From assembly GCA_964234715.1 (NCBI GenBank), contig OZ174278.1: a stretch of DNA of 64,000 nucleotides, one strand, 5' to 3'. This DNA comes from Podarcis melisellensis (taxonomy: Eukaryota). The position numbers and the translations under genes were made by a program. Shown piece by piece: positions 1-47,265 of this stretch. A model generated the notes under the pieces. The model was not told the DNA's origin. It ran no database searches and saw only the letters and a program-made list of their open reading frames with translations. How positions within the stretch are numbered: the stretch's first letter is position 1; each line of letters begins with the position of its first letter.

Positions 1-2284
1 ACAGACTAATCTCTCTCAAGTGTCTTTGCACTGACTTCCACCTCTAACACTGGATGACAGGTAGTCAGAGTCCATCAGTATATCCTGCATTCTTCCTTCC
101 AATGTGCAAGATTATACTAAATCCATTAGCAGATCTGCACTTTTAACCTCATTAGACTGGTAGCTGAGGATGCAGTTTAATCGTTGCAACTGTCTTCTAG
201 TCCTAGTCTTCTGAGAGCTGGGAAGCAAGTGTAAGAACCATCACATACTACAAAGAATAGATTTACCATAAATATGCCTGCTGCAATATTGCTTGGGCTG
301 TACCCTCAAAGCCAAAGTTCATTATGACAATCTTTGCACGAAGTGGATGTCAACTGATTACATTCATGATAACAGAAGGCAGTTGCCTCATCTGAAGAGA
401 AGCATGATGCTTATCCATTTTTACTAGACTTGTGAAAGGTGCTTTACACATGAGAAGCAAGTACGTGTACATTTTAATATCTTTGTTAAATTTATATCCC
501 ATGTTCCTCTGTGCAATACTCAAGGTGGCTAGCAATAAAATAAATCATCTTAAAATTACACTCACACCACAATCTAAGAAGAGAAGTTGAAAATCGTCTA
601 TCAGCATCCAGTTACAATAATATCAACATGGAAGATGTACAAGGCTCTAGAAGAATGTAATGAAAATGTTCCCAAAATTACAAAACCAAAATCAACAAAA
701 GTTTCATTGGAGGAGGGGTGCAATTATGCACATCTTGGGTTTATTTGACTGCAAAACTACGCCTTTGTCTACAGGGAACAGTAGGGAATGCAAATCAAAG
801 CATAAAGATTACAGAGGCATTAAGACATAGACTGGGAGCCAGAAGGAGGCTCCCAGTCTACATCTTGTAACTCATGAAAGTTACCCTGCCCACGTGAAAT
901 ACAAAATGCAGCCTAGAGAACTCTAGAAGTCTCTAGCTTGGTTTTTGCCGCATTAAGATATTTTTTGCTGTTATTAGGTACTGCCATTTGTCATAAGCTG
1001 TTTATTGATTGCCCTTGTGGAAATTATGTTATCCTGCCTTCTGTTGCAGATAAAAAGGTACCAGAAACAAGCATTATTCACAAGCTGTGCACCCTAATAG
1101 GATCATTTCTATTGGATAACCTGCATCATCTGTGCAGTCCATTCATCCGCTGTAGCTGAAGGGAAGCCAATTAAAAAAAACCTTGCATATTTGTAGTTTG
1201 TCATGTGGACAGCCTATCCGAGAAACTGCCCAAGACCCAACATTAAGATGTCCAACAGATGGGAATAATCTATCTTCATCCAGATGGGTTATCAGAATCT
1301 CTGACCAGAGGGATGCGAATGTCCCAGATACCTTACTTTCAATCCCTAAAGCCATTCATTACCCACATATCTATCCATCTCATTCCTGGACTTCACATTT
1401 CTGACTAACTTGATCCAATTACACTAGAACACGCCAAGAGACTTAACTCCTAGGAAGAGGAGCATGTCTTAAGCTACTACCTATCTTTTCCACAGTTTCA
1501 TTTTGCTTTCATCTCTCACAGTCCTGACATTAACCTTTGTAAATTTATAATACATGTGGACAATATTTCAGTAAATCTGGTGAATATTTTGTGAGTTTGG
1601 ACGATACTGGGGATTGCAGAAGCAGCAATAAAAGCAGAAACAGTGGCAGAAGCAGGAATAAAAACATCAGTCAGAATCAAGATGCAGTGGAATCTAACAG
1701 AAGTCCTGGTTGGATTTAATTTTTATACTAATGGACTTTAAAGAGAGATGGCTGTAGGCAGTTACTATTCTAAGATGTGAATAATATTTGTCACACTTTG
1801 GAGAAGCTCTTGTGGCATTTTGGGGGATAGAGAAAGATAGCAATTGGAACTGTGACAAATTAAGCCTTAAAACTGTGCACATGGGGCAAATTACAGTGCT
1901 AGGACACTTCCTTCCTGGAAGGAATTTTGAAGTGGATCAACATGTAAAGCACACAGTTATATGCACATTTTGATTTGGCATGCAAATCTAAACTCTCTGA
2001 TCTTTAGTCAATTCCCTTGGTCAACCAGCCTTCAAGATTCTGAGTCCCATTCCCAGCCTATCTGCTTGGCACTGTGTACATCGGCTTGACAGAATAGAGC
2101 TCCTTAAGCCTTGCCGAATCTCAGTGTTGAGACCATTTGTATTTAACAAAAGAAAGCAAGGACATAGAGACTTTTCCTTGATTTTGTAATTCCCACGGTA
2201 GTGTTTACAAGTTGTAGTTGCAGCATATTAAAGTCTTCTATTCAAATGCTTGTCCATAAAATATGAACTCTGCACACGGACCTA

Positions 2285-13700: not shown

Positions 13701-15465
13701 AAAGCTTTTATGTGGAAATCTTTGAGATTTCCTTTAACCGTAGTCCCTACACCCTTTATTAGCTTCTAAGGTTACACAGGGTATTGCCTGACTTGGGCAT
13801 GGTTCAGATTGAAGGTCTTGTTTTAAAATAAAGCATGGGCAACATGTTAGAGCCACTTCACACGTTTTGTTTTCACCCACCAAACACTGTCATACTATTG
13901 GAGCTGTGTGTAGCGTGAAGAGAAATGACTGAGCATCTTCATACACTGAAGAGCTACCATTGGGTATGGCTCCTTTGGCTCATACTTCTTGCTCACACTT
14001 TTGGAGTCTACTGCAGCAAACCCTGGTGCACTGTTGAGTGCCACCCCACCGTATGGCCACCCATGTGCTTTCACACTTCAGAAAGGAGCTAGCAGACCGG
14101 CCACGGTAGCAAAGGAAGGAATAAGCTGTAACACAACATTCATTTATGCAATCCTGATTTAAGCCACAGCTACCGACAATTGTTGGTGGTTCCTGGGGTG
14201 GTGGCAGCAGTGGCACCTCTCCACTGGTGCTGGGAGAATGCACCACTACTGGTACCTAACAGTCCCAGATCTGCAGGCTGCTTTCTAGAAGTCTGCTGCA
14301 AGGACGTTATAGTTATGTTTGAAATTTTGCTATTGCTTGGGAAGCTGTAGCATTTCCTCCTTTCCCAGTACCTTATGAAACATAACCCACCCAGCAGAAA
14401 CAGTTCATTGAAGGTATGATGATCAAATCTCTTCACACACACACAGCTTGATCTCAACACTGCATAATGGTTGTTTTTCCCCTCAGAAAAAATTGCAATA
14501 TTATCCCCTTTTCACACAACACTGACTCTCTAGCTGGCAAGTGAGGCACTACAAAGAAGAGGCATGTGTCCTGACTAGCAATGCTCTGACTCTCTCAGCT
14601 GCACAGGGTGCACTATGTAGGTGTACATGTGCCAACCAGCAGGCAATGGGCCCAAAAGCAGATTTATTTTCTTCCCGTTTTTGTTATTTATTTAATCATT
14701 TGATGATTATCAGTAATCAACAAAACTCTGCTCCAAAAATATTACTTAATATCATAATACTTTGCAAGTAAACACAAATTAACGCAAAATTACAAGATTT
14801 CTTCTAAAAAAAAAAATCAAACCTGACTGAATTTGCTTTTGCGGGAGGTAATTATTTCCTTGTCAATGTTGTAATACTGTACTGGGCAATCAGTTTCCCC
14901 CAAATTTATTTCTATATTCACCTACAATTCTCGCTCTTAGGTGCTATTTTTTCCGTTACAGCCAAACTTTGTTAAGCCTTTCTTTCCAGGAAGGGAGTAC
15001 TGTAACTTTATGATTTGTTTATTGCTCCAGTAGTTATGGAAGCAGTCAGATGCCATAACTTTAGAACAACTTCCATTTACATTGGTGTCCAGAGGTGTTA
15101 AATGAATGATCAATTCCAGAGTTTGGGACAAACCAAGTTAAGAAGCAGGGATGCCAAGAGAAGTATAAGGCAAGTACTCAAATTCATATGGAGAGAAGTA
15201 AAAGATGTGCTCCTAAGCATGGCATTTCCATCCCAATTTCCTGGATTTCAACCAGCTATAAAGACTACATAAATATTATTTGACAATATCGCCACTGTAG
15301 GATTTCTTTGTGGAACAGAACTTCATGAATTTCTTAAATGCATTTAACACAGCAATATAAAGGGGAAATTCTGATCCACGGACCACAGCTTTTCTGAATG
15401 AATCTCTGCAACAGGCACTATTGTCATGTTCTCTCACCGATTACCATTTTGAGCTTTGCACTGAC

Positions 15466-15885
15466 CTGAGGTCTGGAAGTCTATCTGGATCGGGTTGGAT
15501 AAACCATTGACTGCCTCTCGCCACATGCCTCCACCCCCTGGTGACCATGCAGTCACCACACAGCGATACAGCCCAGCATCAGAAATCTGTGTCTGGTACA
15601 TCCTGTAGCGGAACTCGTTCTCCTGAACCTTTTCCAAGACCACACCATCCACCCGTTCCTGGTCTGTCCAATCTTCCCGTCTGACCACTGAATCTTGATT
15701 GAGAGAAATTATGCGAGTGGTCCCATTAGGAGTTGACCGATCATTCAGATGCTTCTCGGCTGTAATGAGGACTGAGTAACGAGGAGTCTTGATGTTCTGG
15801 GAAGACACCTTGCATGTCATTTCAAAGGTGTGCCCTGCCATGAAGAATGGCTTCAGTTTCACAGCCTCTACGGTCAGCATATAAT
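15466..15885 (-). CDS. PTGFRN: PTGFRN coding exon (exon 6 equivalent): Ig domain 5
   Basis: KPFFMAGHTFEMTCKVSSQNIKTPRYSVLI...RVDGVVLEKVQENEFRYRMYQTQISDAGLYRC...LSNPIQIDFQTSG, near-identical to recalled mammalian PTGFRN. Acceptor tctcag|, donor CAG|gtcagt; 420 nt. Confidence 0.96.
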
Positions 15886-16384
15886 CTGAGAAGAGCAAAG
15901 GAGGCACAGACATAAGCTACAAGCAAAGGATGGACAAACATATACGGCAAGCAAGGGATTAGTGCTGCAATCTAACATTCAGCAGTGCATTTCATGTTAA
16001 AAAAAACCTGAGGAGTGGGCATCATAGTCTGTTAGAGGCAAACACACAAAGAATCTGAGGACAATATGCAAACCTAATAGCATAATTCCCACTGTGTTCA
16101 ATGGGGCTACTCTCAGGCAAGTATGGTATGCACAAGACCACAGCCCAAGTGACACAGCCCTTAGTGGCTACTTAGCAGAATGTTGTGACAATACATGAGG
16201 AACAGAAGCAGCAAGGAAAGGTAGGCATGCAGAATAATTATATACTGAGAATTTAATCTTCATGCTTGGGTGAAGTCCTAATTGAGCCTTAATAAGAAGT
16301 TAGAGTTTCAATTTAACACTACGCAGTGGTTGCCTAAATGGGCATGGGTAAACTTAAGAGTCTGGAAAAATAGCTTTACCAAAT

Positions 16385-25480: not shown

Positions 25481-26700
25481 AGGAATAACTAGGCAAACAC
25501 TTCGTCAACTTACTATTATGCAGTTGCTATACAGAAAAGTAGAACAGTACTTCAAGACCAATTCTGACTTTATAAAAAGCATTTCAAGTGTGGTATTTCA
25601 CATTTCATGCCTATGTTATCAAGTTGAAGCTGGTGTTAAGTGCTGCAATTATGATCCTGAGACTAGGAAGTAAATGTCTAAGATTGACTTGGTGTTTTTT
25701 TCCCCTTAATGCCCACATTCCTGAATAATAATGTACACTGAAAATAAATTGTTTGTGTTTCCATGTTTTATCACCTCAACTAAGCTATTGTGTAGAATAA
25801 CTGCAGCACATTTTTGCTGGTGCACTTAGGCCACTGAATATTGACTCAGGAGGTGGAACTAATTGCAAGTATCAGATTGCAGTGCTCTGGGTTTTGGATA
25901 AAGCTTCAAGGCCCTCCCCCCACCCCAGAAATCCCTACTTATTTCACAAGAACTGCTGCATAGTACAAAGTTTAAGGGTAGCAGCCTCCGTAGCATAATT
26001 GCTTTCTTTTCATATAAATTGCTTCCATGATCTCCAAAACGAGTGCACTGTTAGCATCTTTTCATGGTCCTTTTTTTGTACTGCATTTCAGAAATACAAA
26101 GGCAAGGGATCATTTAATTTCAGACTGAAGACAAGGAGATAGAACAAGTTACATTATCACCACCTCTCTCTCATTTTCCTTGTCTTAATCTAGTGCTCAA
26201 AACCAATGACTGCAAGAACACTGAGGTTGTATACTTCTTTGCAAATAGTTTAACAGATGCCCCTAATATACCACTGCTTTCCTCTCCTGGAGAGGAAAAA
26301 AACATGGGCACGTTTTGCAGAATTCATGAGGCAGCAGCGTTCTCTGTATCCACCTCTCTAGAAGGAAGTAAATAATCGTGGGACAGAAAACAGGGTTCTC
26401 ATTACAAGGTTTCCACCCAAGTAGCTTTCAAAATGTACTTAAATACCCCAGGGATACTAAATGGCTCTTGGGAGAGCAAGTATACTGGCACCTGCAAGCT
26501 AAAACCGATTAAAAGGAAACCCCCATGTTCACACATTTGTCTTCCAGATACTTCTCTGCAGCATCTGGCTGACCACCAACGGCAGACTGGAGAGTAAGGC
26601 ACACGGTAAGTGGATTCAAGGCCAGAGATAGTGATTTACAAGAGGGCTACTGCTGTATATAGCATTTTGTCTTCAGCTTATCTGCAGTCACAGGGTGTAT

Positions 26701-26885
26701 GGGGTGTTAGGGGAGGGGTAGTACCTCTGGTGAGGGACACACTGTGCTCCTTCTGAGGTAGTCTGTCCATCTTTGCTCCCCACTCTGAACTCAACTCTCA
26801 CCTGTGGCTCATGGGAACTGTCAGCATGTGACAGTGGCCACACCTTGGGAAACGGCTTCGACTGGCTGATTAAACCAGGGGAGGG
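26701..26885 (+). ncRNA. HDV-like self-cleaving ribozyme fold (degenerate copy; catalytic C replaced by T)
   Basis: Manual folding: P1 26701-26707/26840-26846; P2 26795-26805/26874-26885; P3 26806-26808/26837-26839; L3 starts TC; GG at 26847-26848 (P1.1); P4 26853-26857/26864-26868; J4/2 (T)TAA 26870-26873. Segment order matches the HDV double pseudoknot. Confidence 0.6.
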
Positions 26886-26995
26886 TAGCCAAAGGGTCTC
26901 AAACCCTCAGCGAGTTAGGGATTCCCCTTCATGCAAAGGCAGCAGACTGAGTGGACAGGACCAATAGTGGGTCCAATGGTCAGGAAGGTGGTTTC
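26701..26995 (+). mobile_element. Probable 5' UTR fragment of an RTE-clade non-LTR retrotransposon (or derived non-autonomous element)
   Basis: GC-richer island that begins at G1 of the HDV-like fold. It resembles RTE 5' UTR sequences as I recall them (ctctcacctgtggctc...ggtctcaaaccctc...gggtccaatggtca). No TSD or ORF found; the 3' boundary is approximate. Confidence 0.55.
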
Positions 26996-29900
26996 CACCA
27001 CCCCCAGGCTCAGCCACACATACGAAAGATCTGCGTTGTGGGTGAACCCAAGATGCATTGTTACAAGTCTGTACCAAAGCCTCCAACTTGGAAAGCCCAA
27101 CAACCTAGTTTTAAACACATCCATTTGCTCACTTATCCCCTGGGTAAATTTGAATTTGACACCTTTCCAAATCCTGCCCTTCTGTTTTCCCGTGGGCTAA
27201 TGTTAAGTACTTTAATAATGAGAGAGGTAGCCTGGCCTTCTGCCCTCGACTGCCCAGACAAATGCCTGCCTTCCTGTAATCACAGGGCAACAATCCAACT
27301 CCCTATTCACATTTCCTCCCCTCTTCTAGGTAAATTGTTTTTGCTATAATAAGATGCAAGTTTGTTCAGTTAATTCCCTCTCTTCTCCCTCACCCCCCAT
27401 CCTGCCTTGAGTATACTCAAGACAGTCTATACGGAAACCAAGAAACACTCCTCCTACATCTCCTGGTATCTCCCTTGTTCCCTGAAAGACAAGACATGCC
27501 AGAAACAATTTCCCCTTTTAAAAAAGTCTAGGATTTTGGACAGAATTTTTAAACAACTAAGAACCAATGCCTTCTTTCCTGGTAACAGAAGGGAGCAATA
27601 AATACATTTATTTTGTTTGATTTTCTCTGTAATGATTTGTTTTATTTTTTATTTTATTTTTCGCCAGGAGCAGGTTTCAAGGAGGTTAATTTCACAATTC
27701 AGTGCCATGCCTGGCTCATATTAGAAACCCCCCTATTTACATGGTGTTCCCTTTAAAGTGTTTGTAATTACTCTACAAATATTAGGGTCAGTTGTATACG
27801 GTTTCCAACCAGCCTAAATTGGTAGGCAGTGGCACCAGCCTTGAGGTACCTTGAGGTACCAAGAGACTTTTGAGTACTAGGGATGAGACTGTCCCAAAGT
27901 AATTCAGCCCAGCTTTGTACAGTACTGAGTGTATGGCTCAGTTATGATACTTAGGACATCTTAAAAGATAGATCTTGAGAAAGCCAATTCTGCTGACCCT
28001 TTAGACCTTGCTCGGTCCCAAAAATATGTTCTTTTTGCGGGGGGGGGGGAGTTGCTGTCTAGGGAATTTAGATTTGATACACAAGATCTAAGATTGTGAA
28101 ACTGAATTAATTTTGAATTAGCATCTCTAGCATAGACCAGATTATCAGTGTTTAGCCGAACTGAACTGGTATTAGGTTTTCTTCAGCAAAGCTATACCCA
28201 AGGAATGATGAGTTCTTATGGCTACCTCTATACATCTAATTTTAAGCTGGGAATTGAATCTGGCTGATGAGCCACATACTTATTCCCCTGAACTCCTGTG
28301 GGTCAAGTTTAGACAGGTGGGTAGCATTGTCAGTCACCTGACATCACAATGATATCAGGTGAGCCACTTTACCAAAACTATCAGTTGACTATTCATACTT
28401 ACAAAGCACTGTGTACAGGGAATTGCACATGGCTTTGAAGATGCTGTCACTCAGCTGATCAGTGATCCTGGCAAAGCCCCTTTAGGCCAGATATATCTTT
28501 ATCTGACCCACACCTGGCATCATATATGAATAGTTTATTTTTAATGTGATATGTAAATTGGGCCAATGGCAGGAAGAAGTTTAAATTCGAGATCCACGGA
28601 GCTCCCTGAACATTCCATATGTCATATATGATGTCAGGCCTAGGGCAGATGGACATGGTTTGGTCAAATAACCTAGTGAGACAAACTGGGATGTCTTGAG
28701 GACCAAATTATGTCTGTGGTCTGCAGCTTCTTCACTGCTGTTTTAAATGAACTGAGGAGGAGACTTATAAAAACTGATTGACTTGGTAAATGTTTGTTTT
28801 CATAAAGCTTGAATCCTGTGTCTGTGTCGGTTTATACTGTCCATTTATGACTATGCGATTTTAAAATTGAAGTGGGCAGGGGATGTACAGTATGTTGATT
28901 TTGCTCACTGATGTTTAACCAATTTAATGCTTCTTTAATTTAATAGTTTATGGTATTGTAAATTTTAGTTTCAGGCACTCTATAATTTGCTATCTTCCTT
29001 TATCTGTTCTAAGCTGAAAATCAAACCAGTTTCCCTACTCCTTTACAGGATAAAATTTCAGCTTCAAAAAGAAAATCAGATTAGCAACAAGGGAAGTAGT
29101 TTATAGTAGCTTGACTGGTATATTGAACTCCTTCCGAACCCAGCCGTAATTTCTATTCCTCCTCCTCTGCCTCTAAAAACTTGCCTTTGATGATCAAGAG
29201 ATATTAAATATGAATAAGAGATAGGAGAAGCTTGTCAGTAAAAAGCTACTGATTCTTGTCTCTGAAAGGCAGGCCTGTTCTTAAGAAGTACTCCTTGATT
29301 TGCCACTTAGCTCTCAGTTTCCGTTTGTGATCGATCTTACAAGGACTAAGTATCTATCTTAGACTTGTCAGTGGAGTACAGTATTTTGCATTTAATGCAA
29401 TCCACAGTGCTCTAGATACAGTAGAGTTAACCTTCAAAAACACCAAGTGCCTACACTCTTATCAAGTGTATAGTGGCAAAATGAAAAGAGGAAAAAATTT
29501 AAAGGCTGAGAGAGCCTTTCTAGTTTTGTGGCATGGCCAGACACATACTTACACTGTGTGTGTGGCATTGTTGTTTTTAAGTACCATAGGTCAGTCCCAA
29601 ATATGATGCTCACTTAGGGTAGCTATTATGTCCCACTTTGCTTTACTTTGAAGTCATCCTCTGGTTGAAGGGCTGATCAGTCCAAGTCCACTTTCAAATG
29701 AAAGAACTATAAGGAGGAAGAGCAGAGGCTGCCCATCAGCAGTTAGCTCCTGGACAGCAAACTGAATAGGCACACAGGTCAACTGGGCCAGCCTTGCCAT
29801 TGACAGTGAGAGATGTATTGCACTTCTATTTCTATTACAGGCATTGGGTCAGATTCACCTTACAAACGCTGTCAGCAGAAGGCTTCACAATAGGACTCTG

Positions 29901-30757
29901 CTCCCCTCCCCTGTGCCTCCCTAAATTGCTTTGGGGTGGGTGGTTGGGAGAACAGTAGCGAGAGGAGAGGGGAGCTGATATGCTTGTGCTGATGAAACAT
30001 TTGTAACAGTGTGACGTCAAATTCCACCCACTATTTCTAAGTTTGCATATTATATAAACACATGCAAATTTATGCAAATCTGTGCCCTCTTTTTGGCAAT
30101 ATGTAAGCTTACCCAGCACGCTATTTATTTATTGGAAAACATGTAAGGGACCCTCACGGGCAGGCAATTATTCTCAAGCAATGTTTCAACATCCTACAAC
30201 TACTGAAAGCATGTTTGAAAGGGGATGGATTTGTTATAATTCTGCTCTGGCAGCATACAATCAGATAAATGCCAGATTTAGTTTTCTATTCTAGATGCAA
30301 ATCTTCAGATTAAAAGGAAAATGTCTGGTCAAGATTTGCATTTTAACTAGCTGGCTGTTAAGTCTTTTCTAACACTAGGTACATTGTCTCAGTATCTTCA
30401 ATATCCCCCACAAACATCCCTTGAAAGCGCAGGGAATATTACAGACTCAGATTAAGTTACCTATAATTATTGTTGTATCAGCATGACATATTGAGAGAAT
30501 GCCATTAAAACAGTCAAGTTTAGAAAATAGTATGTTAAAGGATCCAGGAGTACAACAGACGTCAGGTACAATGTAAGGTGGGGGGAGAGAGAGAAGGTCG
30601 GTGGATATTGTTAAAAATAAGAGTCTAGTGGAATAGCTATAGATTATTTCAGATTGAATATTCCCTTTCCCCTTAGCTTCCTACCTATTTATTCTGTCCA
30701 TCTTTTGCATTTTAGGGCTGGCCAGTGTAGCACACTGACCTTTTCTTAAGGTCACTA

Positions 30758-30999
30758 CAGTGGTACCCCGGGTTACAGACATTTCAGGTTACAGACGCTT
30801 CAGGTTACAGACTCTGATAACCCAGAAATAGTACCTCAGGTTAAGAACTTTGCTTCAGGATAAGAACAGAAATCGTGCAGCGGAGGTGCGGCAGCAGCGT
30901 GAGACCCCATTAGTTAAAGTGGTGCTTCAGGTTAAGAACAGTTTCAGGTTAAGAACAGACCTCCAGAACGAATTAAGTTCTTAACCTGAGGTACCACTG
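30758..30999. mobile_element. Tc1/mariner (Tigger/pogo-like) MITE
   Basis: TIRs cagtggtacc.../...ggtaccactg flanked by TA on both sides; internal caggttacag/caggttaaga repeats. Confidence 0.9.
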
Positions 31000-32343
31000 T
31001 ATTGCCACTGCCCAATCTTCCTCCTCAGATATTCAGGTTTGCAGATATAGTGAAGGGAGTCCTACAGCGTCCTTAATATTTCCAAAAACTGGAATGTTCA
31101 GAGTGAACGCTACAGATCTCTAGTTCAAGTATTTCTACTTCTTCAAGCCACTGGGCCAATTCACGGTGCCTGGAAAAGTTTTGCCTATAGTCACAAATCA
31201 TTGTTAAAAGCTATAGGCAAAACGTTCCTAGGTCTCAATGCTTCTCATAAAACAAAATTTAATAAAAATAGATATCCTACAAACAAGAGCTGTACGTAAT
31301 CCACAGAGACTTAAGTCCAACACAGAGAACCTCCAGCGTATGAACAGCAGTGGGCCTGAGGTACTTCCATCATTTCCTGGCATGTAATCTTAACAAAATT
31401 CAGATTGCCACAAACTCTAGAATGCAATGCTGAAGGCTAAATCAAGAGATAGCATTACAGAGATGGTGGCAGACAACGGTGAGGAAGCTGTGAACACAGG
31501 ACCTCAAATACTACATGACCCACCAGGGTCAACAGGAGGTCAGGACTATTGCAAATCTGGAGCTAAGCCACATATTCTGACTGGTTTTATGTCCAGATCA
31601 TCTGCCTGAGGCTAGGACCACCAATGTTCAGTCCCTGCAGAGAGCCATTCCACTGCAGATCATAATCAACAACCCTCAGGTCAAGTGCTTTAAGGAGCTG
31701 CAAAGTCTAGTAAAAACATATGCACAGACCTATGTAATTCAGTTAACATAGTTTAGTTTTAATGTTATTTGGTTTACACAGAGCAACTCAAAATTAAGTT
31801 AAGCACATGAGACCCCAACTCATCACTTGGTAAGAAGAAATGGGGTTTGAAAAGCAAGGGGGCGGGGGGGGGAGAGAAACCAGCATCAGAAACAAAGATG
31901 AACTGTCAAAATACTGTTTTGCACATCTGGCAAGAAATGGAACTTGCTAAAATATCAAGGAAAACTGTGTTTACTTTAAAATAAATAAAAAGCAGGGGGA
32001 GAGAATGCCACACATGCAGCCACCACATTTCAGATCACTCAAAGCACATTCCAAAGAGTAGAAACAGATTTCCACAGTCTAACAAAAATGGGATAAACCT
32101 GTCTTTCACAAACAAGGCTACATTTTAAAGTCTGAGCAGCTATTATACTGTTTATGCTACATTTCTCTCAAGAGACACAACAGCTAAAAAGCCTCGTATG
32201 AGTGACAAGCAATTTGGATACTGTAGTTTACAAAGAAAAGCTTCCATTTCAGTCCAGGAGGAGGAAAACATTCTTAGCCCAAGTATGTCACACAAATTTT
32301 AAAACGTCACATTTTTATCAGCCACCAGAGGAATCCATATATT

Positions 32344-33507
32344 TGACCATAGCATCCTTCTGGACCGTCTAGAGGTGCTGGGAGCTGGGGGCACTGTCAT
32401 ACAGTGGTTCCGCTCCTTCCTCCTGGGCCGTGTCCAGAAAGTGGTGGTGGGGGGTGAGTGTTCAGACCCCTGGGCTCTCACTTGTGGGGTGCCTCAGGGT
32501 TCTGTCCTCTCCCCCATGCTTTTTAATATCTATATGAAGCCGCTGGGAGAGATCATCAGGGGGTTTGGACTGGGTGTTCATCAGTATGCAGATGACACCC
32601 AGCTCTACCTCTCCTTTAAATCAGAACCAGTGAAGGCGGTGAAGGTCCTGTGTGAGTGCCTGGAGGCGGTTGGAGGTTGGATGGCGGCTAACGGATTGAG
32701 GTTGAATCCTGACAAGACAGAAGTACTGTTTTTGGGGGACAGGAGGCGGGCAGGTGTGGAGGATTCCCTGGTCCTGAATGGGGTAACTGTGCCCCTGAAG
32801 GACCAGGTGCGCAGCCTGGGAGTCATTTTGGACTCACAGCTGTCCATGGAGGCGCAGGTTAACTCTGTGTCCAGGGCAGCTGTCTACCAGCTCCACCTGG
32901 TACGCAGGCTAAGACCCTAACCTCCCCGCGGACTGTCTCGCCAGAGTGGTGCATGCTCTAGTTATCTTACACTTGGACTACTGCAACGCGCTCTACGTGG
33001 GGCTACCTTTGAAGGTGACCCGGAAACTGCAATTAATCCAGAATGCGGCAGCTAGACTGGTGACTGGGAGTGGCCGCCGGGACCACATAACACCGGTTCT
33101 AAGAGATCTGCATTGGCTCCCAGTACGTTTCCGAGCACGATTCAAAGTGTTGGTGCTGACCTTTAAAGCCCTAAACGGCCTCGGTCCTGTATACCTGAAG
33201 GAGCGTCTCCACCCCCATCGTTCAGCCCGGACGCTGAGATCCAGCGCCGAGGGCCTTCTGGCGGTTCCCTCATTGCGAGAAGTGAGGCTACAGGGAACCA
33301 GACAGAGGGCCTTCTCGGTAGTGGCGCCCGCCCTGTGGAACGCCCTCCCATCAGATGTCAAAGAGATAAAGAATTACCTGACGTTCAGAAGACATCTTAA
33401 GGCAGCCCTGTTCAGGGAAGTTTTTAATATGTAATGCTGTACTGTTTTTAACACTGATTGGGAGTGGCTGGGGAAACTCAGCCAGATGGGCAGGGTATAA
33501 ATAATAA

Positions 33508-37981: not shown

Positions 37982-38443
37982 TCTGTGGAAGGAATTCAAC
38001 ATTGCCAGAGTGCTTGCTGGATGGAATCATTTCCCCTCTTCTCCCTCCACACATTGTTTTGGGTGTTCTCCTGATGCCTCCAAGTCAATTGGGGGGGGGG
38101 AGTGGAGGGAGCTGGAGCTGGGGGACAGGAAAGCGGGGAAGCCCTGATGCACTAGTAGCCCTGTGTATGCTGCCCTAAAATATTTCTAGCACAGGACTCT
38201 TAGCAACCTTAGCTTGGAATTATTGTTGATTGTGCTGAACATTCCTAAATGGTACTGTGCTCTTTGATCTCATCATTAGCCACTTTCTTCCACTTTCCCA
38301 TCCAAAGATGGCAATGGCAGATGTATATACATCTATCAAAACCCTTTAGAAATTTTCCATCTCGGAGTCTCTAAAGGCAAGCCACTGAGTCACCAACAAT
38401 TTGCATCACAAGTTTTTAAAGTCAGGCTGTACAAGATTCCTAC

Positions 38444-38869
38444 CTTGTGTAGACCATAAAATGCTTACAGGCACAGAAGCCACATCCTTGATCTTTATCC
38501 AGCTGTTATTTCGTTGCCTGCTCCATGAAGAAATTACACAATAATAATCTCCTCTGTCTGCTTCAGAGGTCCACTGGATTCGTAAGCGGAAGGTGTCCAC
38601 AGTTGGTTTAGAGAAAATAATTTCCCCATTCTGGGCCCGGTGTTTGCTTCTGTCCCCAACCACCAGCGTCCAGTCTGCATCCATGGTGGCAAGAAGTTCA
38701 TCTTTCACTACTTCATCACTGCGCATAGGTAATCGGTAGTACCATGAGACAGTGAAACGCACATTTGTTTCAGTGTTCTGTGCCTCTGTGATCCTACATT
38801 CCAATTCTGTGGGATCTTCTGCATACTTAGGTGTTTTAGTCGCATTCAAAAACACATGGTAAGTTGGCT
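38444..38869 (-). CDS. PTGFRN: PTGFRN coding exon (exon 5 equivalent): Ig domain 4
   Basis: EPTYHVFLNATKTPKYAEDPTELECRI...NVRFTVSWYYR...ELLATMDADWTL...DRGDYYCVISSWSRQRNNSW. Acceptor ccgcag|, donor AAG|gtagga; 426 nt. Confidence 0.95.
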
Positions 38870-41800
38870 CTGCGGAGCATTTTGAAAAGCAGGGAGACAG
38901 ACAAGGAAACAAAAGTATGAAATAAAGACCAATTCAGAATACAGGCTACATTTTCACATTTATCATTTCAGAACGGCAACATTCTTTTGGCATCTTGCAA
39001 GTCATGGCATAGGATGGGGCATTTACTACTTAGCTGGTGACAGTGGACCATGTAATTCCCAGAAATGGAGTATCTTCATAGCATGCAATCCCAAGTCAAA
39101 CAAAAGGCAGATTCTAAAGCCAACATTTAGTAAGTCACACTATACTGTAGGAATTTCATAATACAACATTCTGGTTACAGAACACTGCATTGCAATTGCA
39201 AAGTCTGCCTCTCAGGGAAATGTTTCATTTTAATGAACATGCTCCCCATTTTGGAAGGGCATGCCAAGAGCGTGTCAGGTTTCTGTACACTGCTTTACCA
39301 TTCATTTTATTGCCCACTTCAGCGACCTTGGCAGAGGAAAGCTGGCACTAGAGCAAGCCAATATTGGAGAGAATCCCACATTTACTTGTTCCTGGTGTTG
39401 AATGCCAGTGCTAGAAACTGAATACCCTTCAAGTTAACGTTACTGGGGTTTTTTTAAAATACAATTTCTGACAGTTTCATAATCACAAGTCTGAAAGAAC
39501 TATGAAGGGCCTACTTTCTGCTCTTAGCAACCATATTTAGGATCCCAGAAAAGAAGAAATACAATGCAATAACAATATTTATAAAGGTAGTGGAGGGAAA
39601 GGTAGTTAATGAGCCACAAAAAGGGTTGGGTTGGCCAATCATACCTCATCTTAATAAGTCAAGATCTGAATGAGGCTTATGGATGCACACACAGTGCCCT
39701 TGCTCCCTGCTTTGCTACAGTTTACTATTTTGTCCAAACAAGGAAACTATGGTTAACAGTTTCTGAACAAGCCAGGATATGAAAACTTAGTTTGAAGTTG
39801 GATTGATACCCTTACTTGTTCCACAACAATTAATTTCCTGGTTTGGCTGATACAGGAAGCAATAGTTAATCAACATCTCCTTGGTTTGTTAGCGGGAAGG
39901 GAGGAGCAAAAGAGCTGCTCATGTGCGGCCAAAAGGCTTGTTCTCGGCTCAGCATAATGGTATATGATAATCTGAACCAGCCCACATAATTCACTGGAGC
40001 AGCTTGCTTCCAAACAGAAGCACCAACAACATTTTCATGTCCTCATTAGGAAATAGAAGAAAGTTGAAGGCAAATGGGATGTCAGCTAATCATATCCAGC
40101 ATTTGGAAGACCTATAGGGAATAGGATGGCTGGGGCAAGTTTTGGCTTTGACAGGAGTGCTCCAGCTAGTCTCTTCACACTGACTCTCAGACAGAGGATT
40201 TAGCAGGAAGGAATAAAAGGCTTGCTGGATAAGCCTCATTCCTGCACTCTTGTCAGCTGTCAAAGAACAGCCTTGCTGACAGTTCAACGACTTAATACCC
40301 TGCCAAGCTCTCAAACTTCAATCAAGTAGGAGGGGGCTGCTGTTGAATCTTGGATGCAGTTTATGTACTACAGATGAGAATTCCTCTCCTGCTTTTCCCA
40401 CCCGCAGGCAATGTAAGATCATTTGAAAAACATTTTGCTCCTCCCCCTTAACCTGCATCAAAATAATTACTAATTTGGGATGCAAAGGTGAAGAAATTCC
40501 CACTGACCAACAGAATACTTTCAGTGCAGAAAAGAGGCACCCTATTCAAGGCAGTTTTTAAAGCTATGGATGCTTTCCAGATAATATTGGTAACAGAAGT
40601 ACACTGAGTGTACAGAATCAGTGGCACCTGATATCTGTTGGATGAGAAGAATAAGAGACAAGCTCTCTCTCATAATTAGGCCTACAGCAAGCAGGATGGA
40701 AATCATTAGGCCATATTGAGATTTCCTTTCCTTTCCTTTAAAAACTTGCACAGCTTATTCTCATTCCTCTAAGGCTATAATTCTAAACTAACCTATTAGC
40801 CTATTGAACTCAATGGCTGCATTTACACATAGTGCTAAATACTAACTGAAGTTTCATAAACCATGCTAGGTAGTGCACAAGGGCTGTTTCACTATTCTAG
40901 TCCTTGAGAGCAGAGAAACAAATAATAAAAAGGCAGCTGGCTTAGTTTCATCCAAATCCAAGGTTGTGGTTTGCATTGCCTAAACAAACCAACATCACTA
41001 GCCAGGCTTACACTATTATTTGTTATCAGCTTATACTCTTGGGCTTGCTATTAAACGGTAACACAGCCAAAGAGATTTACTTGCAGATAAACATGTTTAA
41101 AATTGGATTGTACAAATGCTGCAGAAGTGGATTTTCAGCTCTCTTGGCTCTCTGAAGAACAAGAGATGCTGTGGCTGTCAGGACTGGGTTATCATCAACC
41201 AGATCTTGATTTGTGCTACGATAGCATTCAGAAGTGTATATGCACAATGCTTGAATTTCAGCAGAGTATAAGTAGAAATGCTTGCTCCCACTGCTTGAAA
41301 GGCTGTCAAGAATCATCTGGCTCCTAATTGCAAAGTCAAAAGCCAGAAACTTGATTTTTTTAATTATCCTCTAAGAGATGCTGACACGTCAAGGCAAACT
41401 CTACAGAACAACATGGTTCTTTAGAAATTTGTGCTAGGGTTTCAGTTTTCCATATCTCTCCTGCCTGGATGCTCATTTCCTAGAACATCTGCATAAAAAG
41501 CAGATCTCAGTAGCTTAAGAGTTCAGCCAGAAAAACAGAGTTAGTGAAAACACAGTTCTCCATAAAGTCAAAGCTGAATATTGGGGTAAGGAAAAGTGAA
41601 AAACAATGTTTTTGTCTAGACAAACTTCTGGTTCAACTCCTAATCTTTCTATATGATATAACATCCATTAAATAATAGAAAGTGATCTATATTATTTTTA
41701 GGATTTCCCCAAGGAAATATGGCAGATCTGACAATGGGTCTGAAAGAACCATTATAGTAGTGACTGTGGGATTAGTCCAGTCGTCCAAGCCACACTCAAG

Positions 41801-42792: not shown

Positions 42793-42845
42793 TACACAAG
42801 AAAAATTATCCATCAACTTTATAGCATCACCACCCAGCTACTCAC

Positions 42846-43229
42846 CTAATGCCAACACCTCCACAGTGACAGGGACAGATGTCCTCTCTGCTACCTTGTG
42901 CCAGCTACCATTGTGCTGTGGCACCCAGAGAGTTGCTTGGCAGTAGTAGTAACCGGAATCTTCAGTGCTCACATCACGTACCAATAGGTGGTAAGAACTC
43001 CGATCCACATGGCTGAGGCTGATGAGGGTAGAATCACTAACAACAGAATCACGGTCTGCACTTAGCAAAACCTGAGCTTCTGCCATGGTGCTATCAGGTG
43101 ATTCACTGAAGTACCACCTGACCTCTGCTTGGAAAATGCCACTTCTGTCTGTTGTGAAGTTGCAGGTAAGGTCAAGGGAGTCCCCCTCTGTCACAGATAC
43201 ATTGCTTCTGGTGATAAACACACCTAAAG
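42846..43229 (-). CDS. PTGFRN: PTGFRN coding exon (exon 4 equivalent): Ig domain 3
   Basis: NVSVTEGDSLDLTCNFTTDR...SHVDRSSYHLLVRDVSTEDSGYYYC...SWHKVAE. Donor TAG|gtgagt. Acceptor taken as the first AG after the pyrimidine tract (384 nt); an in-frame alternative would start at 43223. Confidence 0.92.
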
Positions 43230-44539
43230 CTTTTGGCAGGAGGGAAGCAAGACAAAAAAGTGTTATTTTCAACTCTTTAATACAGCAGGTAGCCTAACTG
43301 TTGGCTTCTGCTGCCTGCTTTTTTAATTAGTCGCCTACATATTTACAGGCAAAGTTCACATATATTATTGCTGAACTATAGAAAAACAGGCAGTGAACTT
43401 TTTTCCCCAAGTTTCACTACTTATTTAATTCTATGTTCTGAAGCAAATCATTGTGCAATTTCAGTTTTCTTAGAATAAAAAAACAGCTACCTTTGCCTTG
43501 TGCAGGGAAATGCAAGGACACAACAATTTTTTTCTAATCAAATTCACTGTCAATCCAGCTTCACACAATTTACGTCTAGCTATGACATCGTTCCAACAGA
43601 AGGTGTTCCAAATGGCTCTACATTTTGCTACGTACAATTAATCCGCCCAGGGGAGAAAAACACCTCACATGCCTACCTACTCCAACATAACAAGCATTAT
43701 AACTTCAAGCACAGGGAAGATCAAGGGGGTCTCTCACCATCACAGAGATGTTGTTTCTCATAATGAATACACCTAAAGCCAAGACACACTCCCAAAGGAA
43801 TACAAATCAGATTTTACAAGCTAACTACTATGAAGAACTGAACCACATCTGAATGATTGCTGTGGCATTTTCAAATTCTCTGTGTGGTGATTAAAGGATT
43901 AAAGGTCCAGTATGAGTATACTTGCAAAAACATATAATTTCATTTTGCTGCCAAGAAGCCAACTTGCTTATTCTTCCTTCTCCAAAATTACCAACGTACA
44001 CATTTTGCAGCCTGGCATGATCCTTTAAAGCACATGCATTGCACACAGGTATATTTAAACAAAGGGAGGGGAACAGTCATTTAAAGACTACTGTCTAGTA
44101 GCTAAGCTATTGGGGGGAAGTTGCGAACTTAAAACAACTGTAGATTTAAATTCTCCTTTAGCCCTAGGCAATCCCCAAAGCCAGGTAACAAGACCTTTTA
44201 CACAAATATCCTATACAAACTACTGAAAAAGAAAAGAGTCCTCTGTTATGAAGCCTGGGTTTTAAATAGATTCCAAACACAACTATGCAGTAGGTATTCA
44301 AAGAAAATACAAATATCTAAGTTCTTATTTGCAGTGCCTTCACAACATATCTAACACATGTACTGAGGAAAGTACACACTGTTACTATATTATATACTGT
44401 GCTGAGATACTTAAGGGAGCAGCCACTATGGCTTTACACCAAATGTTGGTGGCCTGCACATTCTGTCCCACAGCCACAATGGTGTCACAGCATAGATGCT
44501 GATACAGGCAACATCATTTCATGAATACCGCATGCTCAC

Positions 44540-44959
44540 CTGTTGGCTGCACCACAACATTTGCTATATCCACAGCCTTCTCTTGTATCTTCTGCCATGA
44601 AGCATCTGCACCTTTAACCCATTCACTCACTCGACACCTATAGGCACCTTCATCTGTTGGAAGAGCTTGGGACACAGACAAGCGGTAAATGTCATTGGCC
44701 ATGGCATCTAAACGCACATCTCCACTGATATAGCGCTCGTTATACTCTGAACCAGGCTGGAACTTGCCCTCATGCGTCAAGGAGAGAATTTCTTGCCAGG
44801 CAAACCCGTTTCTGAATTCCCAAGACACATGCAGATGTGTGTGTTCTGAAGAATTGGTGGACGCTGAGCAGCGCAACTGAAATGCATCTCCTTCCGATAA
44901 GTTCCAAGTAGATGTGGAGCGGGCTGTTGACCTACCAACGGTTAAGCCATCCGCAATCA
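44540..44959 (-). CDS. PTGFRN: PTGFRN coding exon (exon 3 equivalent): Ig domain 2 with the EWI-motif position
   Basis: EGDAFQLRCSAS...HTHL...LTHEGKFQPG...SGDVRLD...YRLSVSQAL...YRCRVSEWV...WQKIQEKAV. Acceptor gaatag|, donor CAG|gtgagc; 420 nt. Confidence 0.95.
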
Positions 44960-45571
44960 CTATTCGGAGAAAAGAAAGTTATCAAGCGTGTGGGTTATAA
45001 TAAATGGCTTTACATAAAGCAACGATGAAACAGAGTCAAGCTGTGGTAGATTGTCATGAAAGAGATGACTAATTATGCAGCATAATGAGTACGCTGAGCC
45101 AAAACAAATCACTCACATTGGAAAGCATGAGCAAAAAAGTGTTTTCACACACCACACTTTCTCCCTTAACTCAATCAATTATTCAGCTTCAGAAAGACCT
45201 CCACCCACAATTACCTCTTCAAGTAAATCTATTAGCAGAGAAACTTCCCCTTCCAGTATACTTTGTTTAAAAACAAATGTCAGCGAAGAAGGGTGGAAGA
45301 GACTGGAATATAACAGGAGCTATTCTGAGCATTTTGCTTTGTTTTATAAATTCAAATGATCCTGTTGAGATAGTCACCAACCCACTGCTTCAATTAAGCA
45401 AGCACAGGACAATGCTGTGGCACCAATGGGACATGGGGCACTGTCCACCTTCAGGTTATACAAAAGTGTATTTGGCTAGATTGCATCTACTCCAGCCATT
45501 TCACGTATCGCTTGCAAAATTACACTAAGACCCAATACCAATTGTAAATACCCCTCACCCTTTAGAAGTAC

Positions 45572-45949
45572 CTTTGACTTCGACTACAGCGTTGTAATTT
45601 CCCTGAACAACAGAATCTGTGCTGGGCGTTGTGCATCGGTACATCCCTTGGTCAGTGGGACGGATGTTTCCAATCACGAGTTCCACAGAGTTGTTGCTGT
45701 TTCGCCTCAATGTGATCTCTTTACCGTCAACCCGATCTTTATATTCCTGAGACGTGAACCAAGGGTCCCAAGTACTCACTACTTGTACAAATTTAGAGTC
45801 CAGAGCAGAGATTCTAGAGAACTCCCAGTCAAAGTTCTGCTCGCTGGGTCCTTCATATTGACTAACATTGCATGGAATCACCACCTCTGTGCTCTCAACT
45901 CGCACTAGAGGACCTGCAGGCACCTTCACAATACGCCCATGGCAGGAAG
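45572..45949 (-). CDS. PTGFRN: PTGFRN coding exon (exon 2 equivalent): end of signal peptide + Ig V-type domain 1
   Basis: Translation SCHGRIVKVPAGPLVRVESTEVVIPCNVSQYEGPSEQNFDW...YRCTTPSTDSVVQGNY matches recalled human PTGFRN (LCRGRVVRVPTATLVRV...VIPCNVSDYDGPSEQNFDW...CSTPSTDATVQGNY). Acceptor ccccctag|, donor AAG|gtactt; 378 nt, phase 1-1. Confidence 0.95.
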
Positions 45950-46008
45950 CTAGGGGGGGAAACAAAGGATTGTAAGTTAAAATTGCAAGAGAGAGTGAGT
46001 GTGTGTAA

Positions 46009-46009
46009 T

Positions 46010-46033
<24 letters not shown>
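46009..46033. repeat. (CA)n microsatellite
   Basis: Direct reading; about 60 nt upstream of the exon 2 acceptor. Confidence 0.9.
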
Positions 46034-46040
<7 letters not shown>

Positions 46041-47265
46041 TATACATAAAGGGAGCCATGGGGAGGAAAGTAAAAAGGACACTATTGTTTGCCGTTTAAT
46101 TGATGGTATATTGCAATGTTTAAGGTGAAAATGTTTGTCAGTGAATTAGGAGAGTGCGCAGTGGGTTGAAATGGCGGAAGGCAAGATCAAATCCTTGCTT
46201 AGTTGTGAAATGCAATGGGTGGCCTTTGGGACATTGCTCCTCTTCACTACATCCATATTCGACTTGTCATTGGATGCCATCTGGGATTGTGAATACTGTC
46301 AGCCACAATTTAAGAATTCTTGTTCTTTCCACAAACATGATTTCCTTGATCCTCCCTTTCATCTGCACTATGTACAGCTCCACTTTAGAAGAGTTAACAA
46401 AACTGAGTCAAGAATTTAAAAGAGTCCAATTACCACCTCATCTAGTTTGCAGATGAAATGGTGTGTCTTGTTTCAGAAACAGAAGTCATTTGAAATGAGC
46501 TGCCTGGCCATGACTGAAAAGAGAGCCACCAATTCTGGTGATATTCTGGTGCCTAGATATTCTGAAGGTTTTAACCATTTTGGTTAAAGAGGCATGCCAC
46601 CAAGGGTTTGTTTGCTTTGCAGCATTTTAATGTTTTAGACATCTCTCATCAGTTAATGCTATTAACATTTTCATTGCTGTGTTAAGTTGGGGACGTAAGT
46701 GATTATTTAATGTTAACAGAAGAGGAAGTTCAAAACTGCAACTTTGAATCAAATTACAAAGTACCGTATGCCTTGTGCTTTTCTTCTATAAATAGCAATC
46801 AAAGAATTTCTCCTGCTTCTCTTTTATTCATTCATAGTAAACAAAACATCAGTGTTGCAATTTGAATGATTTCACAATGCTTGTGTTTTTGATGCATGAT
46901 CATCTAAATATATATGAAAGTCAACAGCATGGAGTGGAAGAGATATCTGCCCCCTACAGCCCTTGAGCTTTCATTGTAAGAATGACACCCACATTTTGGG
47001 GGTTCAAATATTTCAAATGGAAAACACAAAAGAAATGCAACCCTTATTTCCCATCTCAGTGTTCACTGGTGTCAAGCATCTAGAGCTGCTGCTGGAGAGA
47101 CAGGGAGCAAGACGACATACAGGGCACTAAGCATATCCTACATAATCCATTGTCTGTAGCCATGCCCCATGGCAGAACTGCATCTGTTTCGGACTGAGAA
47201 AGACTCACAAGTTAGGGATTTACATCAGGACAAGAAGACTTGACTGATAACTCAGGAACAACCTA

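What the first reader, a model, noticed from the sequence alone, without database searches (positions are those of the whole stretch)
26809..26836. Non-canonical stem-loop inserted into L3 of the HDV-like fold
Seen: between the G25-equivalent and the 3' strand of P3 lies a perfect 7-bp hairpin, ACTGTCA-gcatg-TGACAGT (26817-26835), making L3 28 nt. Established: canonical HDV L3 is 7-8 nt, insertions are normally in J1/2 or P4, and position 27 is extruded and dispensable. Inference: this is a structural subclass with an extra helix in L3 that descriptor searches with a short L3 would miss. It could therefore be an undescribed ribozyme variant; I cannot confirm novelty without a literature and Rfam check.
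Basis: partly seen in the sequence, partly recalled or inferred. Interest (0 to 1): 0.75.

Follow-up and report, generated by a model that had tools for sequence, protein, structure and literature searches.

The report
Extra hairpin in delta-type ribozyme loop
A short jumping-gene family in this lizard genome starts with what looks like a hepatitis-delta-type self-cutting RNA that carries an unusual extra hairpin in its catalytic loop; the copy in this window is a decayed one, and cutting is untested.

Summary
The hairpin ACTGTCA-gcatg-TGACAGT is at 26817-26835 as described. Alone it is not beyond chance: the window holds 51 perfect 7-bp hairpins against about 36 expected.

It gains meaning from its setting. 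Window 26693 to about 27010 is one copy of a very abundant retroposon, laid by thousands of contigs in two DNA runs. The family's majority letters keep the hairpin, closed by G-C instead of A-U. They also repair every defect of this copy's delta-like fold:
- second P1.1 pair (26811 C)
- P2 mismatch (26880 U)
- catalytic C in a CUAA junction (26870 C)
- L3 beginning UCCUAG

A strict descriptor of my own matches the majority version once. It does not match the window copy, and chance gives 0.02 matches per 64 kb. The family's 5' edge coincides with the first G of a possible P1.

One distant relative, a metagenome contig about 66% identical elsewhere, has the same hairpin. It was fetched by that hairpin, so this is weak support.

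Rfam gives no HDV-clan match, and no paper I could search describes a helix in L3.

Verdict: a probable new structural variant of HDV-like retrotransposon ribozymes. This copy is dead, activity is untested, and there is no real covariation in the stem.

The scan had already noted the same family and hairpin elsewhere in this genome.

The parts
26693..27010 (+). One copy of an abundant non-coding retroposon (RTE-like by earlier scan notes; no long ORF). Its 5' end is at 26693 and it has lost the family's first G. A possible 3' end at 27010 is followed by a weak 8-nt target duplication: CAGTCACA 26685-92 and CAGCCACA 27011-18.
   Evidence: word depth rises from 35 to 10,000-45,000 between 26693 and about 27013, with single-copy flanks. 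Loose ends at 26693-26696 have unconserved T/A-rich flanks; no second copy in the window; no long ORF.
26693..26698 (+). P1 5' strand in the family-edge register. Paralogues have one more G in front, giving GGGGUGU, so cleavage would fall at the element's first nucleotide.
   Evidence: table 7: in all four runs the consensus of the flank ends in G just before 26693. One search gives the pairing table.
26701..26707 (+). It is an alternative partner for the P1 3' strand.
26708..26796 (+). Long J1/2 domain of 89 nt that folds into an irregular hairpin (-30 kcal/mol here, -36 kcal/mol for the family majority).
26797..26804 (+). P2 5' strand, CUCACCUG.
   Evidence: 8 bp perfect in the family majority and in L001 (one U-G); A-G mismatch in this copy.
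26806..26808 (+). P3 5' strand, GGC.
   Evidence: invariant in window, majority and L001.
26809..26816 (+). 5' part of L3. It reads UCAUGGGA here and UCCUAGAA in the family majority, giving the U20, C21, C22, U23 and G25 equivalents. This copy has lost the C22 equivalent (A26811).
   Evidence: 26811 A>C 93%, 26813 G>A 95%, 26815 G>A 96%.
26817..26835 (+). The extra hairpin: a 7-bp stem with loop GCAUG. The closing pair is A-U here and G-C in the family master and in L001.
26837..26839 (+). P3 3' strand, GCC (G26836 is unpaired).
26840..26846 (+). P1 3' strand, ACACCUU here and ACACCCU in the majority. U26846 would give the G-U pair at the cleavage site.
   Evidence: 26845 T>C 85%.
26847..26848 (+). 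P1.1 3' strand, GG, followed by GAAA.
26853..26868 (+). P4, CGGCU / GGCUG, with loop UCGACU. The master is probably GGCCG, with CpG sites that decayed in many copies.
   Evidence: fold; table 7 (TG/CA variants at CpG sites); (L001 has G-C at 26854/26867; window CpG o/e 0.23).
26870..26875 (+). J4/2. It reads CUAAAC in the family majority and UUAAAC here, so the catalytic-C equivalent is lost in this copy.
   Evidence: 26869 A>G 87%, 26870 T>C 89%.
26876..26883 (+). P2 3' strand, CAGGGGAG here and CAGGUGAG in the majority.
   Evidence: 26880 G>T 86%.

Best explanation
The stretch is the head of a decayed copy of a non-coding, RTE-like retroposon. Its master copies begin with an HDV-like (delta-type) self-cleaving ribozyme.

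In the family's majority sequence the nested double pseudoknot is complete:
- P1 is GGGGUGU/ACACCCU, starting at the element's first nucleotide.
- J1/2 is a long structured domain.
- P2 has 8 bp and P3 is GGC/GCC.
- L3 begins UCCUAG, and P1.1 is CC/GG.
- P4 is short.
- J4/2 is CUAAAC and holds the catalytic C.

Inferred mechanism: when the element is transcribed inside a longer transcript, the ribozyme cuts just 5' of its first G. [quoted passage not shown]

The extra hairpin replaces the one or two nucleotides that follow the G25-equivalent. In HDV ribozymes those nucleotides are bulged out and unconstrained. A helix can therefore project from that point without disturbing the stack of P3, the U-G pair and P1.1 (inferred). 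It may stabilise the P3/L3 fold or bind a partner; that is speculation.

The window copy is no longer a working ribozyme. It has U for the catalytic C, A for C22, a mismatch in P2, and has lost the first G.
For: - The family is real and abundant, with a sharp 5' edge at 26693 preceded by a conserved G and unrelated T/A-rich flanks.
- The majority letters restore P1.1, P2, the catalytic C and UCCUAG, and none of the 23 majority differences breaks a proposed helix.
- L001 agrees with the majority at 13 of those 23 sites and with the window at 4, so the majority letters are ancestral.
- My own strict descriptor matches the majority version once, at exactly these coordinates. It does not match the window as it stands, and the null expectation is 0.02 per 64 kb.
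- The hairpin is kept in the majority, with a G-C closing pair, and in L001.
- RTE-clade LINEs are reported to carry 5' self-cleaving ribozymes, and bipartite non-autonomous RTEs keep the LINE 5' end (PMC5786205).
- The resemblance of J4/2 GGCUAA to the antigenomic HDV ribozyme, and of UCCUAG to HDV's UCCUCG, rests on my own knowledge.
Against: - No Rfam HDV-clan match, even at E up to 10, in the window copy or L001. Both are defective copies, and the majority sequence could not be submitted.
- No cleavage data: all runs laid were contigs, which cannot show RNA 5' ends.
- P4 is weak, and J4/2 is two letters longer than in HDV.
- If C is ancestral at 26846, as one loose-end consensus suggests, the first P1 pair is G-C rather than G-U.
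- The 5' part of L3 is the most diverged stretch in both decayed copies.
- The hairpin stem is invariant, so nothing shows that its pairing is selected.
- A competing plain stem-loop, a 7-bp outer stem 26803-09/26836-42 stacked on the hairpin, is the minimum-energy fold. Its z-score is only -1.8.
Confidence: 0.6

Rival explanations
1. Relic ribozyme. The family descends from an HDV-like ribozyme, but the hairpin insertion in L3 abolished or weakened catalysis. The elements get their 5' ends some other way, and the hairpin now serves another role, such as protein binding or RNA stability.
For: The L3 length is far outside the 7-8 nt of all described members (own knowledge). Rfam models fail. 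The 5' part of L3 diverges quickly in the window copy and in L001 while the hairpin stays identical.
Against: The dominant, most amplified subfamily keeps every catalytic and pairing position. The family's 5' edge coincides with the first G of P1. The insertion point is the one place in L3 reported as bulged and unconstrained (PMC3386971).
Confidence: 0.17
2. Not a ribozyme at all. The 5' region of the retroposon is simply a structured leader (long J1/2 hairpin plus a bulged stem-loop at 26803-26842), and the delta-like pairing scheme is a coincidence found by eye.
For: The minimum-energy fold is a plain bulged stem-loop that uses parts of the proposed P1 and P2 strands. There is no Rfam match. 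HDV-like descriptors have low sequence content and give chance hits at genome scale; my null of 0.02 per 64 kb implies hundreds per vertebrate genome (PMC4870747).
Against: The independent family majority moves toward the canonical pattern at four key positions and away from it at none. The match lies at the exact 5' end of a retroposon, where such ribozymes are known (PMC5786205). P2 stays paired in L001 through a C-G to U-G change.
Confidence: 0.18
3. A chance hairpin peculiar to this locus.
For: Perfect 7-bp hairpins are common: 51 in the window against about 36 expected.
Against: The same hairpin is in the family majority across thousands of contigs in two or more species, and in a metagenome relative.
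Confidence: 0.02

Closest known systems
HDV-like self-cleaving ribozymes at the 5' ends of non-LTR retrotransposons (R2, RTE, L1Tc/ingi, Baggins; Ruminski et al. 2011 as cited in PMC5786205; R2 in PMC3774820)
   Same: Position at the first nucleotide of the element. Nested double-pseudoknot layout. A G at +1 with a G-U pair. A 3-bp P3. L3 starting UCCUNG. A 2-bp P1.1. A C at the start of J4/2. A long structured J1/2, as in the large mosquito RTE ribozymes (PMC4908430).
   Different: L3 is 28 nt, with a 7-bp hairpin between the G25-equivalent and the P3 3' strand. J4/2 is 6 nt. There is no Rfam hit and no cleavage data. In the R2 survey the only L3 peculiarity reported is altered spacing in the jewel wasp.
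Hepatitis delta virus genomic and antigenomic ribozymes
   Same: Core letters: UCCUAG against UCCUCG; GGGAAAC against GGGCAAC after P1; GGCUAA at the end of P4 and J4/2, as in the antigenomic form (own knowledge). The nucleotide after the conserved loop-III G is bulged and unconstrained (PMC3386971), and that is where the hairpin sits.
   Different: The viral ribozymes have a 7-8-nt L3, a short J1/2 and a long P4. They process rolling-circle transcripts, not retroposon RNA.
Bipartite non-autonomous RTE elements and R2 SIDE elements (PMC5786205, PMC3414825)
   Same: A short non-coding element that keeps the 5' head of a LINE (with its ribozyme) and is mobilised in trans.
   Different: The 3' tail and the autonomous partner of this family were not identified here. 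This copy departs from the dominant subfamily after 26995.

Membership tests
HDV-like ribozymes | Nested double pseudoknot: P1 (about 7 bp), P2, P3 (3 bp), P1.1 (1-2 bp) and P4 in the canonical order | tested here: met
   Met by the family majority sequence. In the window copy P1.1 has one pair and P2 has a mismatch, so that copy fails my descriptor.
HDV-like ribozymes | Catalytic cytosine at the start of J4/2 | tested here: met
   C at 26870 in 89% of family depth. The window copy and L001 have U there; L001 has a C one position later.
HDV-like ribozymes | Conserved U and G of L3 (U20/G25 equivalents) and the two C that form P1.1 | tested here: met
   The majority L3 begins UCCUAG. The window copy keeps U, C and G but has A for the second C. 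L001 has U for that C and A for the G.
HDV-like ribozymes | G at +1 forming a G-U wobble at the cleavage site | tested here: inconclusive
   G-U with U26846 in the window copy; no rival letter at 26846 appears among the rows shown, so I carried U into the majority sequence. One loose-end consensus has C at that CpG site (table 7), which would give G-C in the master.
HDV-like ribozymes | L3 is a closed loop of 7-8 nt | tested here: not met
   L3 is 28 nt with an internal 7-bp hairpin, in the window, in the family majority and in L001. This is the point of the finding.
HDV-like ribozymes | Match to Rfam HDV-clan covariance models | tested here: not met
   No match at gathering score in the window. 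None at E up to 10 in 26400-27300 or in L001. Only decayed copies could be submitted.
HDV-like ribozymes | Site-specific self-cleavage giving 5'-OH and 2',3'-cyclic phosphate | not testable with these tools
   All runs laid were contigs, so there is no information on RNA ends.
Retrotransposon 5' ribozymes | The cleavage site coincides with the 5' end of the element | tested here: met
   The family's edge is at 26693, with a conserved G before it and unrelated flanks in four runs. That G starts a GGGGUGU able to form P1.
RTE-clade non-autonomous retroposon | 3' tail shared with an RTE LINE, and the RTE insertion signature | not tested
   The 3' tail was not identified. Flanks upstream of the copies are T-rich, which fits the T-stretch signature of PMC6007223 only loosely. 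The RTE label comes from scan notes.

The most novel reading that the evidence does not exclude
Active HDV-like ribozymes exist in nature with an additional helix (a 'P3.1') growing out of the 3' side of L3. This subclass would head an abundant vertebrate retroposon family and be shared with a distant relative in another organism, perhaps spread by horizontally moving RTE-type elements. It would be invisible to current descriptors and Rfam models.
Probability: 0.4. Interest if true: 0.7.

Novelty: new variant of a known kind. Interest (0 to 1): 0.5.

Why it matters
If the majority sequence cleaves, the rule that L3 of delta-type ribozymes is a tight 7-8-nt loop would be wrong. Search descriptors and covariance models would need an optional helix there, and more hidden members could be found in vertebrate genomes, where few are known. 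It would also give a natural test of how much the catalytic loop tolerates, and a handle for engineering: an aptamer or protein-binding site placed next to the active site. For genome annotation, it explains the sharp 5' end of an abundant lizard retroposon family.

Tried and rejected
- Rfam at gathering score on the whole window, and at E up to 10 on 26400-27300 and on L001: only noise (snoRNA and miRNA models at E of 1.6 to 8).
- Search for a second copy in the window by blastn and by pattern: none.
- Fetching family copies through spurious ORFs across the element. Word searches with window 26815-26964 and L001 479-640 found no candidates. Exact look-ups of four L001 ORFs found nothing.
- Pattern scans. 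The L3/P3/P1.1 pattern with a free hairpin gave 0 in metagenome and viral contigs. The hairpin pattern gave 1 metagenome contig, L001, and 0 in genome and viral contigs. A hairpin-independent pattern (P2 3' strand plus a downstream block) gave 0 in genome and viral contigs.
- Covariation in the hairpin: rejected as evidence. The stem does not vary, and the G-C to A-U change at the closing pair is expected in about 8% of copies from the single-site frequencies.
- An alternative P4 register (26854-57/26868-71), suggested by subfamily consensus letters: rejected. Those letters are TG/CA decay products of CpG sites (window CpG o/e 0.23), and that register would bury the catalytic C.
- Shared 'AT' at 26869-70 in the window and L001 as an ancestral state: rejected. 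Four agreements among 23 sites is what transition bias predicts.
- The coral relative mentioned in an earlier scan note could not be reached or tested.
- I did not submit the majority consensus to any sequence tool, because it has no reference and would have had to be typed.

Full report
**Observation.** The window reads ACTGTCA GCATG TGACAGT at 26817-26835. A perfect 7-bp hairpin is not remarkable in itself. The window contains 51 with loops of 3-8 nt, against 36 +/- 7.5 in simulated sequence. The minimum-energy fold of 26790-26930 is a plain bulged stem-loop: an outer stem 26803-09/26836-42 stacked on the hairpin, with a z-score of only -1.8.

**What the stretch belongs to.** Contigs of four public runs were laid on 26300-27800 at 80% likeness. 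They show that 26693 to about 27013 is a very abundant repeat:
- 2,622 contigs were laid in one DNA-like run and 3,241 in the other, nearly all on the repeat.
- Summed word depth is 10,000-45,000, against 35-42 in the single-copy flanks.

In all four runs the matches start at 26693-26696. The consensus of what lies before is unconserved and T/A-rich, but it ends in G (table 7). The family therefore begins one G before 26693, where the window has A. There is no other copy in the window and no long ORF in the element.

Earlier notes of this scan call the genome a lizard's and the element RTE-like, and they record the same hairpin in other copies. I used these as leads only.

The window has a CpG observed/expected ratio of 0.23. 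It carries Ig V-set-like exons on the minus strand on both sides of the element. The copy therefore lies antisense between exons of an Ig-domain gene or gene cluster.

**Family majority against this copy.** One search lists 23 positions in 26693-26995 where a letter other than the window's is frequent; for 21 it holds most of the depth, and I also took C at 26835, which leads only in the two RNA-like runs, while keeping A at 26891. Putting these 23 letters into the sequence gives a complete delta-type core:
- P1 is GGGGUGU (26701-07, and the same 7-mer at the family's 5' edge), paired with ACACCCU at 26840-46. A G-U pair comes first.
- J1/2 is an 89-nt structured domain (-36 kcal/mol).
- P2 is CUCACCUG (26797-804) with CAGGUGAG (26876-83), 8 perfect pairs.
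- P3 is GGC/GCC.
- L3 begins UCCUAG.
- P1.1 is C26810-C26811 with G26847-G26848, followed by GAAA.
- P4 is CGGCU/GGCUG. The TG and CA variants in the loose-end consensus sequences show that the master was probably GGCCG.
- J4/2 is CUAAAC.

The window copy differs at four key places:
- A26811 breaks P1.1 and the UCC motif.
- G26880 gives an A-G mismatch in P2.
- U26870 removes the catalytic C.
- U26845 turns a G-C pair into G-U.

None of the 23 differences damages a proposed helix in the majority.

A strict descriptor that I wrote requires all of the following:
- a 7-bp P1 starting with G
- a 7-bp P2
- a Watson-Crick 3-bp P3
- L3 starting TCCTNG
- 1-30 further letters in L3
- GG for P1.1
- a C in J4/2

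It matches the window with the majority letters once, at these coordinates. It does not match the window as it stands. It matches 0.02 times per 64 kb of simulated sequence.

**The hairpin in the family.** The majority keeps the stem and loop. The closing pair is G-C in the master:
- G at 26817 has 88% of depth.
- C at 26835 lies in a CpG. It has 28-31% of depth in the DNA-like runs and 68-83% in the two RNA-like runs, with T the decay product.

This copy's A-U is a double change. From the single-site frequencies, about 8% of copies would show it by chance, so it is not covariation evidence. No other stem position appears among the listed variants, though 56 rows were not shown. An invariant stem says nothing for or against pairing.

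**A relative.** Scans for the L3/P3/P1.1 pattern with a free hairpin found nothing. The hairpin pattern found one metagenome contig, L001.
- L001 aligns with the element from about 26760 to 27013 and beyond.
- It is 66% identical to the majority outside the searched letters, and 74% within the core.
- It is 5'-truncated, with no P1 5' strand and a T8 run directly upstream.
- P2 stays fully paired through a C-G to U-G change. P3 is intact. P1.1 is C-G plus U-G. The P4 pair 26854/26867 is G-C.
- Its L3 5' part is UCUUCAUA, two transitions from UCCUCGUA. One of those transitions is at a CpG.
- It agrees with the lizard majority at 13 of the 23 sites and with the window at 4, the number that transition bias would give. 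This supports the view that the majority letters are ancestral.

Because L001 was fetched by the hairpin, its identical hairpin is only weak evidence of special conservation. At 66-74% identity, 21 fixed letters would survive in roughly 1 copy in 1,000. How many relatives without the hairpin the collection holds is unknown.

Interestingly, the window copy goes on matching L001 after 26995, where the dominant lizard subfamily departs (loose end). This copy therefore looks like an older, longer form.

**How it would work (inferred).** Read-through transcription yields an RNA in which the double pseudoknot forms. The C at 26870 and a bound metal ion promote attack of the 2'-OH of the nucleotide before the first G. 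That releases the element's RNA with a defined 5' end, ready for target-primed reverse transcription by a LINE enzyme supplied in trans.
- This is the role reported for R2, RTE and L1Tc ribozymes (PMC3774820; PMC5786205, citing Ruminski 2011).
- It fits bipartite non-autonomous RTEs, which keep the LINE's 5' end.
- The insertion site is the gap between the conserved loop-III G and the P3 3' strand. In the antigenomic HDV ribozyme the nucleotide there is bulged out, always accessible and the least conserved of the loop (PMC3386971). A helix could therefore leave the core at that point.
- A stabilising role, like that shown for the J1/2 helix of large HDV-like ribozymes (PMC4908430), is possible but speculative.

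**Comparison with what is known.** Rfam 15 gives no HDV-clan match for the window or L001, at gathering score or at E up to 10. Only defective copies could be tested. Six full-text searches and five papers read found no HDV-like ribozyme with a helix in L3. The nearest remark is the unusual spacing of conserved L3 nucleotides in the jewel-wasp R2 ribozyme. Key papers (Webb 2009; Ruminski 2011; Webb and Luptak 2011) are not in the library, so the negative is limited.

**Verdict.**
This is most likely (0.6) a decayed copy of a retroposon whose master carries an HDV-like ribozyme with an extra L3 helix, a new variant of a known kind.
- Activity is untested.
- The rivals are a relic that no longer cleaves (0.17) and a structured leader with a coincidental resemblance (0.18).
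- The scan had already noted this family and hairpin at other places in the same genome (s1-505028, s1-514986, s1-515013, s1-509526). The earlier claim of a related ribozyme heading an intact coral element could not be tested here.

Noticed in passing
window 26700-26810 (run X18): In one RNA-like run, a single contig of word depth about 2,660 covers only the J1/2 domain, while the rest of the element has depth 60-500. Several contigs of the two RNA-like runs stop matching at 26809/26810, exactly where L3 begins. This may be a second, highly expressed family sharing only this 110-nt module, or a different sequence after P3 in that species.
   Followed up: no
window 26692-26707: Two GGGGUGU 7-mers lie 9 nt apart, one at the family's 5' edge and one at 26701-07. 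Both can pair with the P1 3' strand, which gives two possible cleavage registers.
   Followed up: partly
window 26995-27013 and L001 about 385-420 (minus strand): The dominant lizard subfamily departs from this copy at 26995, but the copy continues to match the metagenome relative. It seems to be an older or longer form of the element. A weak 8-nt target duplication (CAGTCACA 26685-92, CAGCCACA 27011-18) would put its end at 27010.
   Followed up: partly
window 15434-15913, 38406-38912, 42838-43272, 44514-44960, 45555-46082 (minus strand): Open exons with immunoglobulin V-set/Ig domain matches (E down to 4e-11). This is a multi-Ig gene or cluster, and the retroposon copy lies antisense between these exons.
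   Followed up: partly
window 32375-33434 (+): A reverse-transcriptase fragment (Pfam RVT_1, E 5e-19) followed by a second ORF. It is a LINE remnant whose clade was not determined. It is separated from the element by single-copy DNA.
   Followed up: no
window 30750-31005: A cluster of 16-17-nt tandem units and 20-25-nt inverted repeats around GTACCTCAGGTTAAGAAC. It is probably another small repeat element.
   Followed up: no
window 26824-26828: The hairpin loop GCAUG contains the self-complementary CAUG, which could in principle mediate loop-loop contacts between two RNAs.
   Followed up: no
L001 618-625 and flanks of lizard copies (table 7): T-rich sequence lies directly upstream of the copies: T8 in L001, and T/A-rich consensus flanks in the lizards. 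This loosely fits the T-stretch insertion signature reported for RTE-mobilised retroposons (PMC6007223).
   Followed up: no
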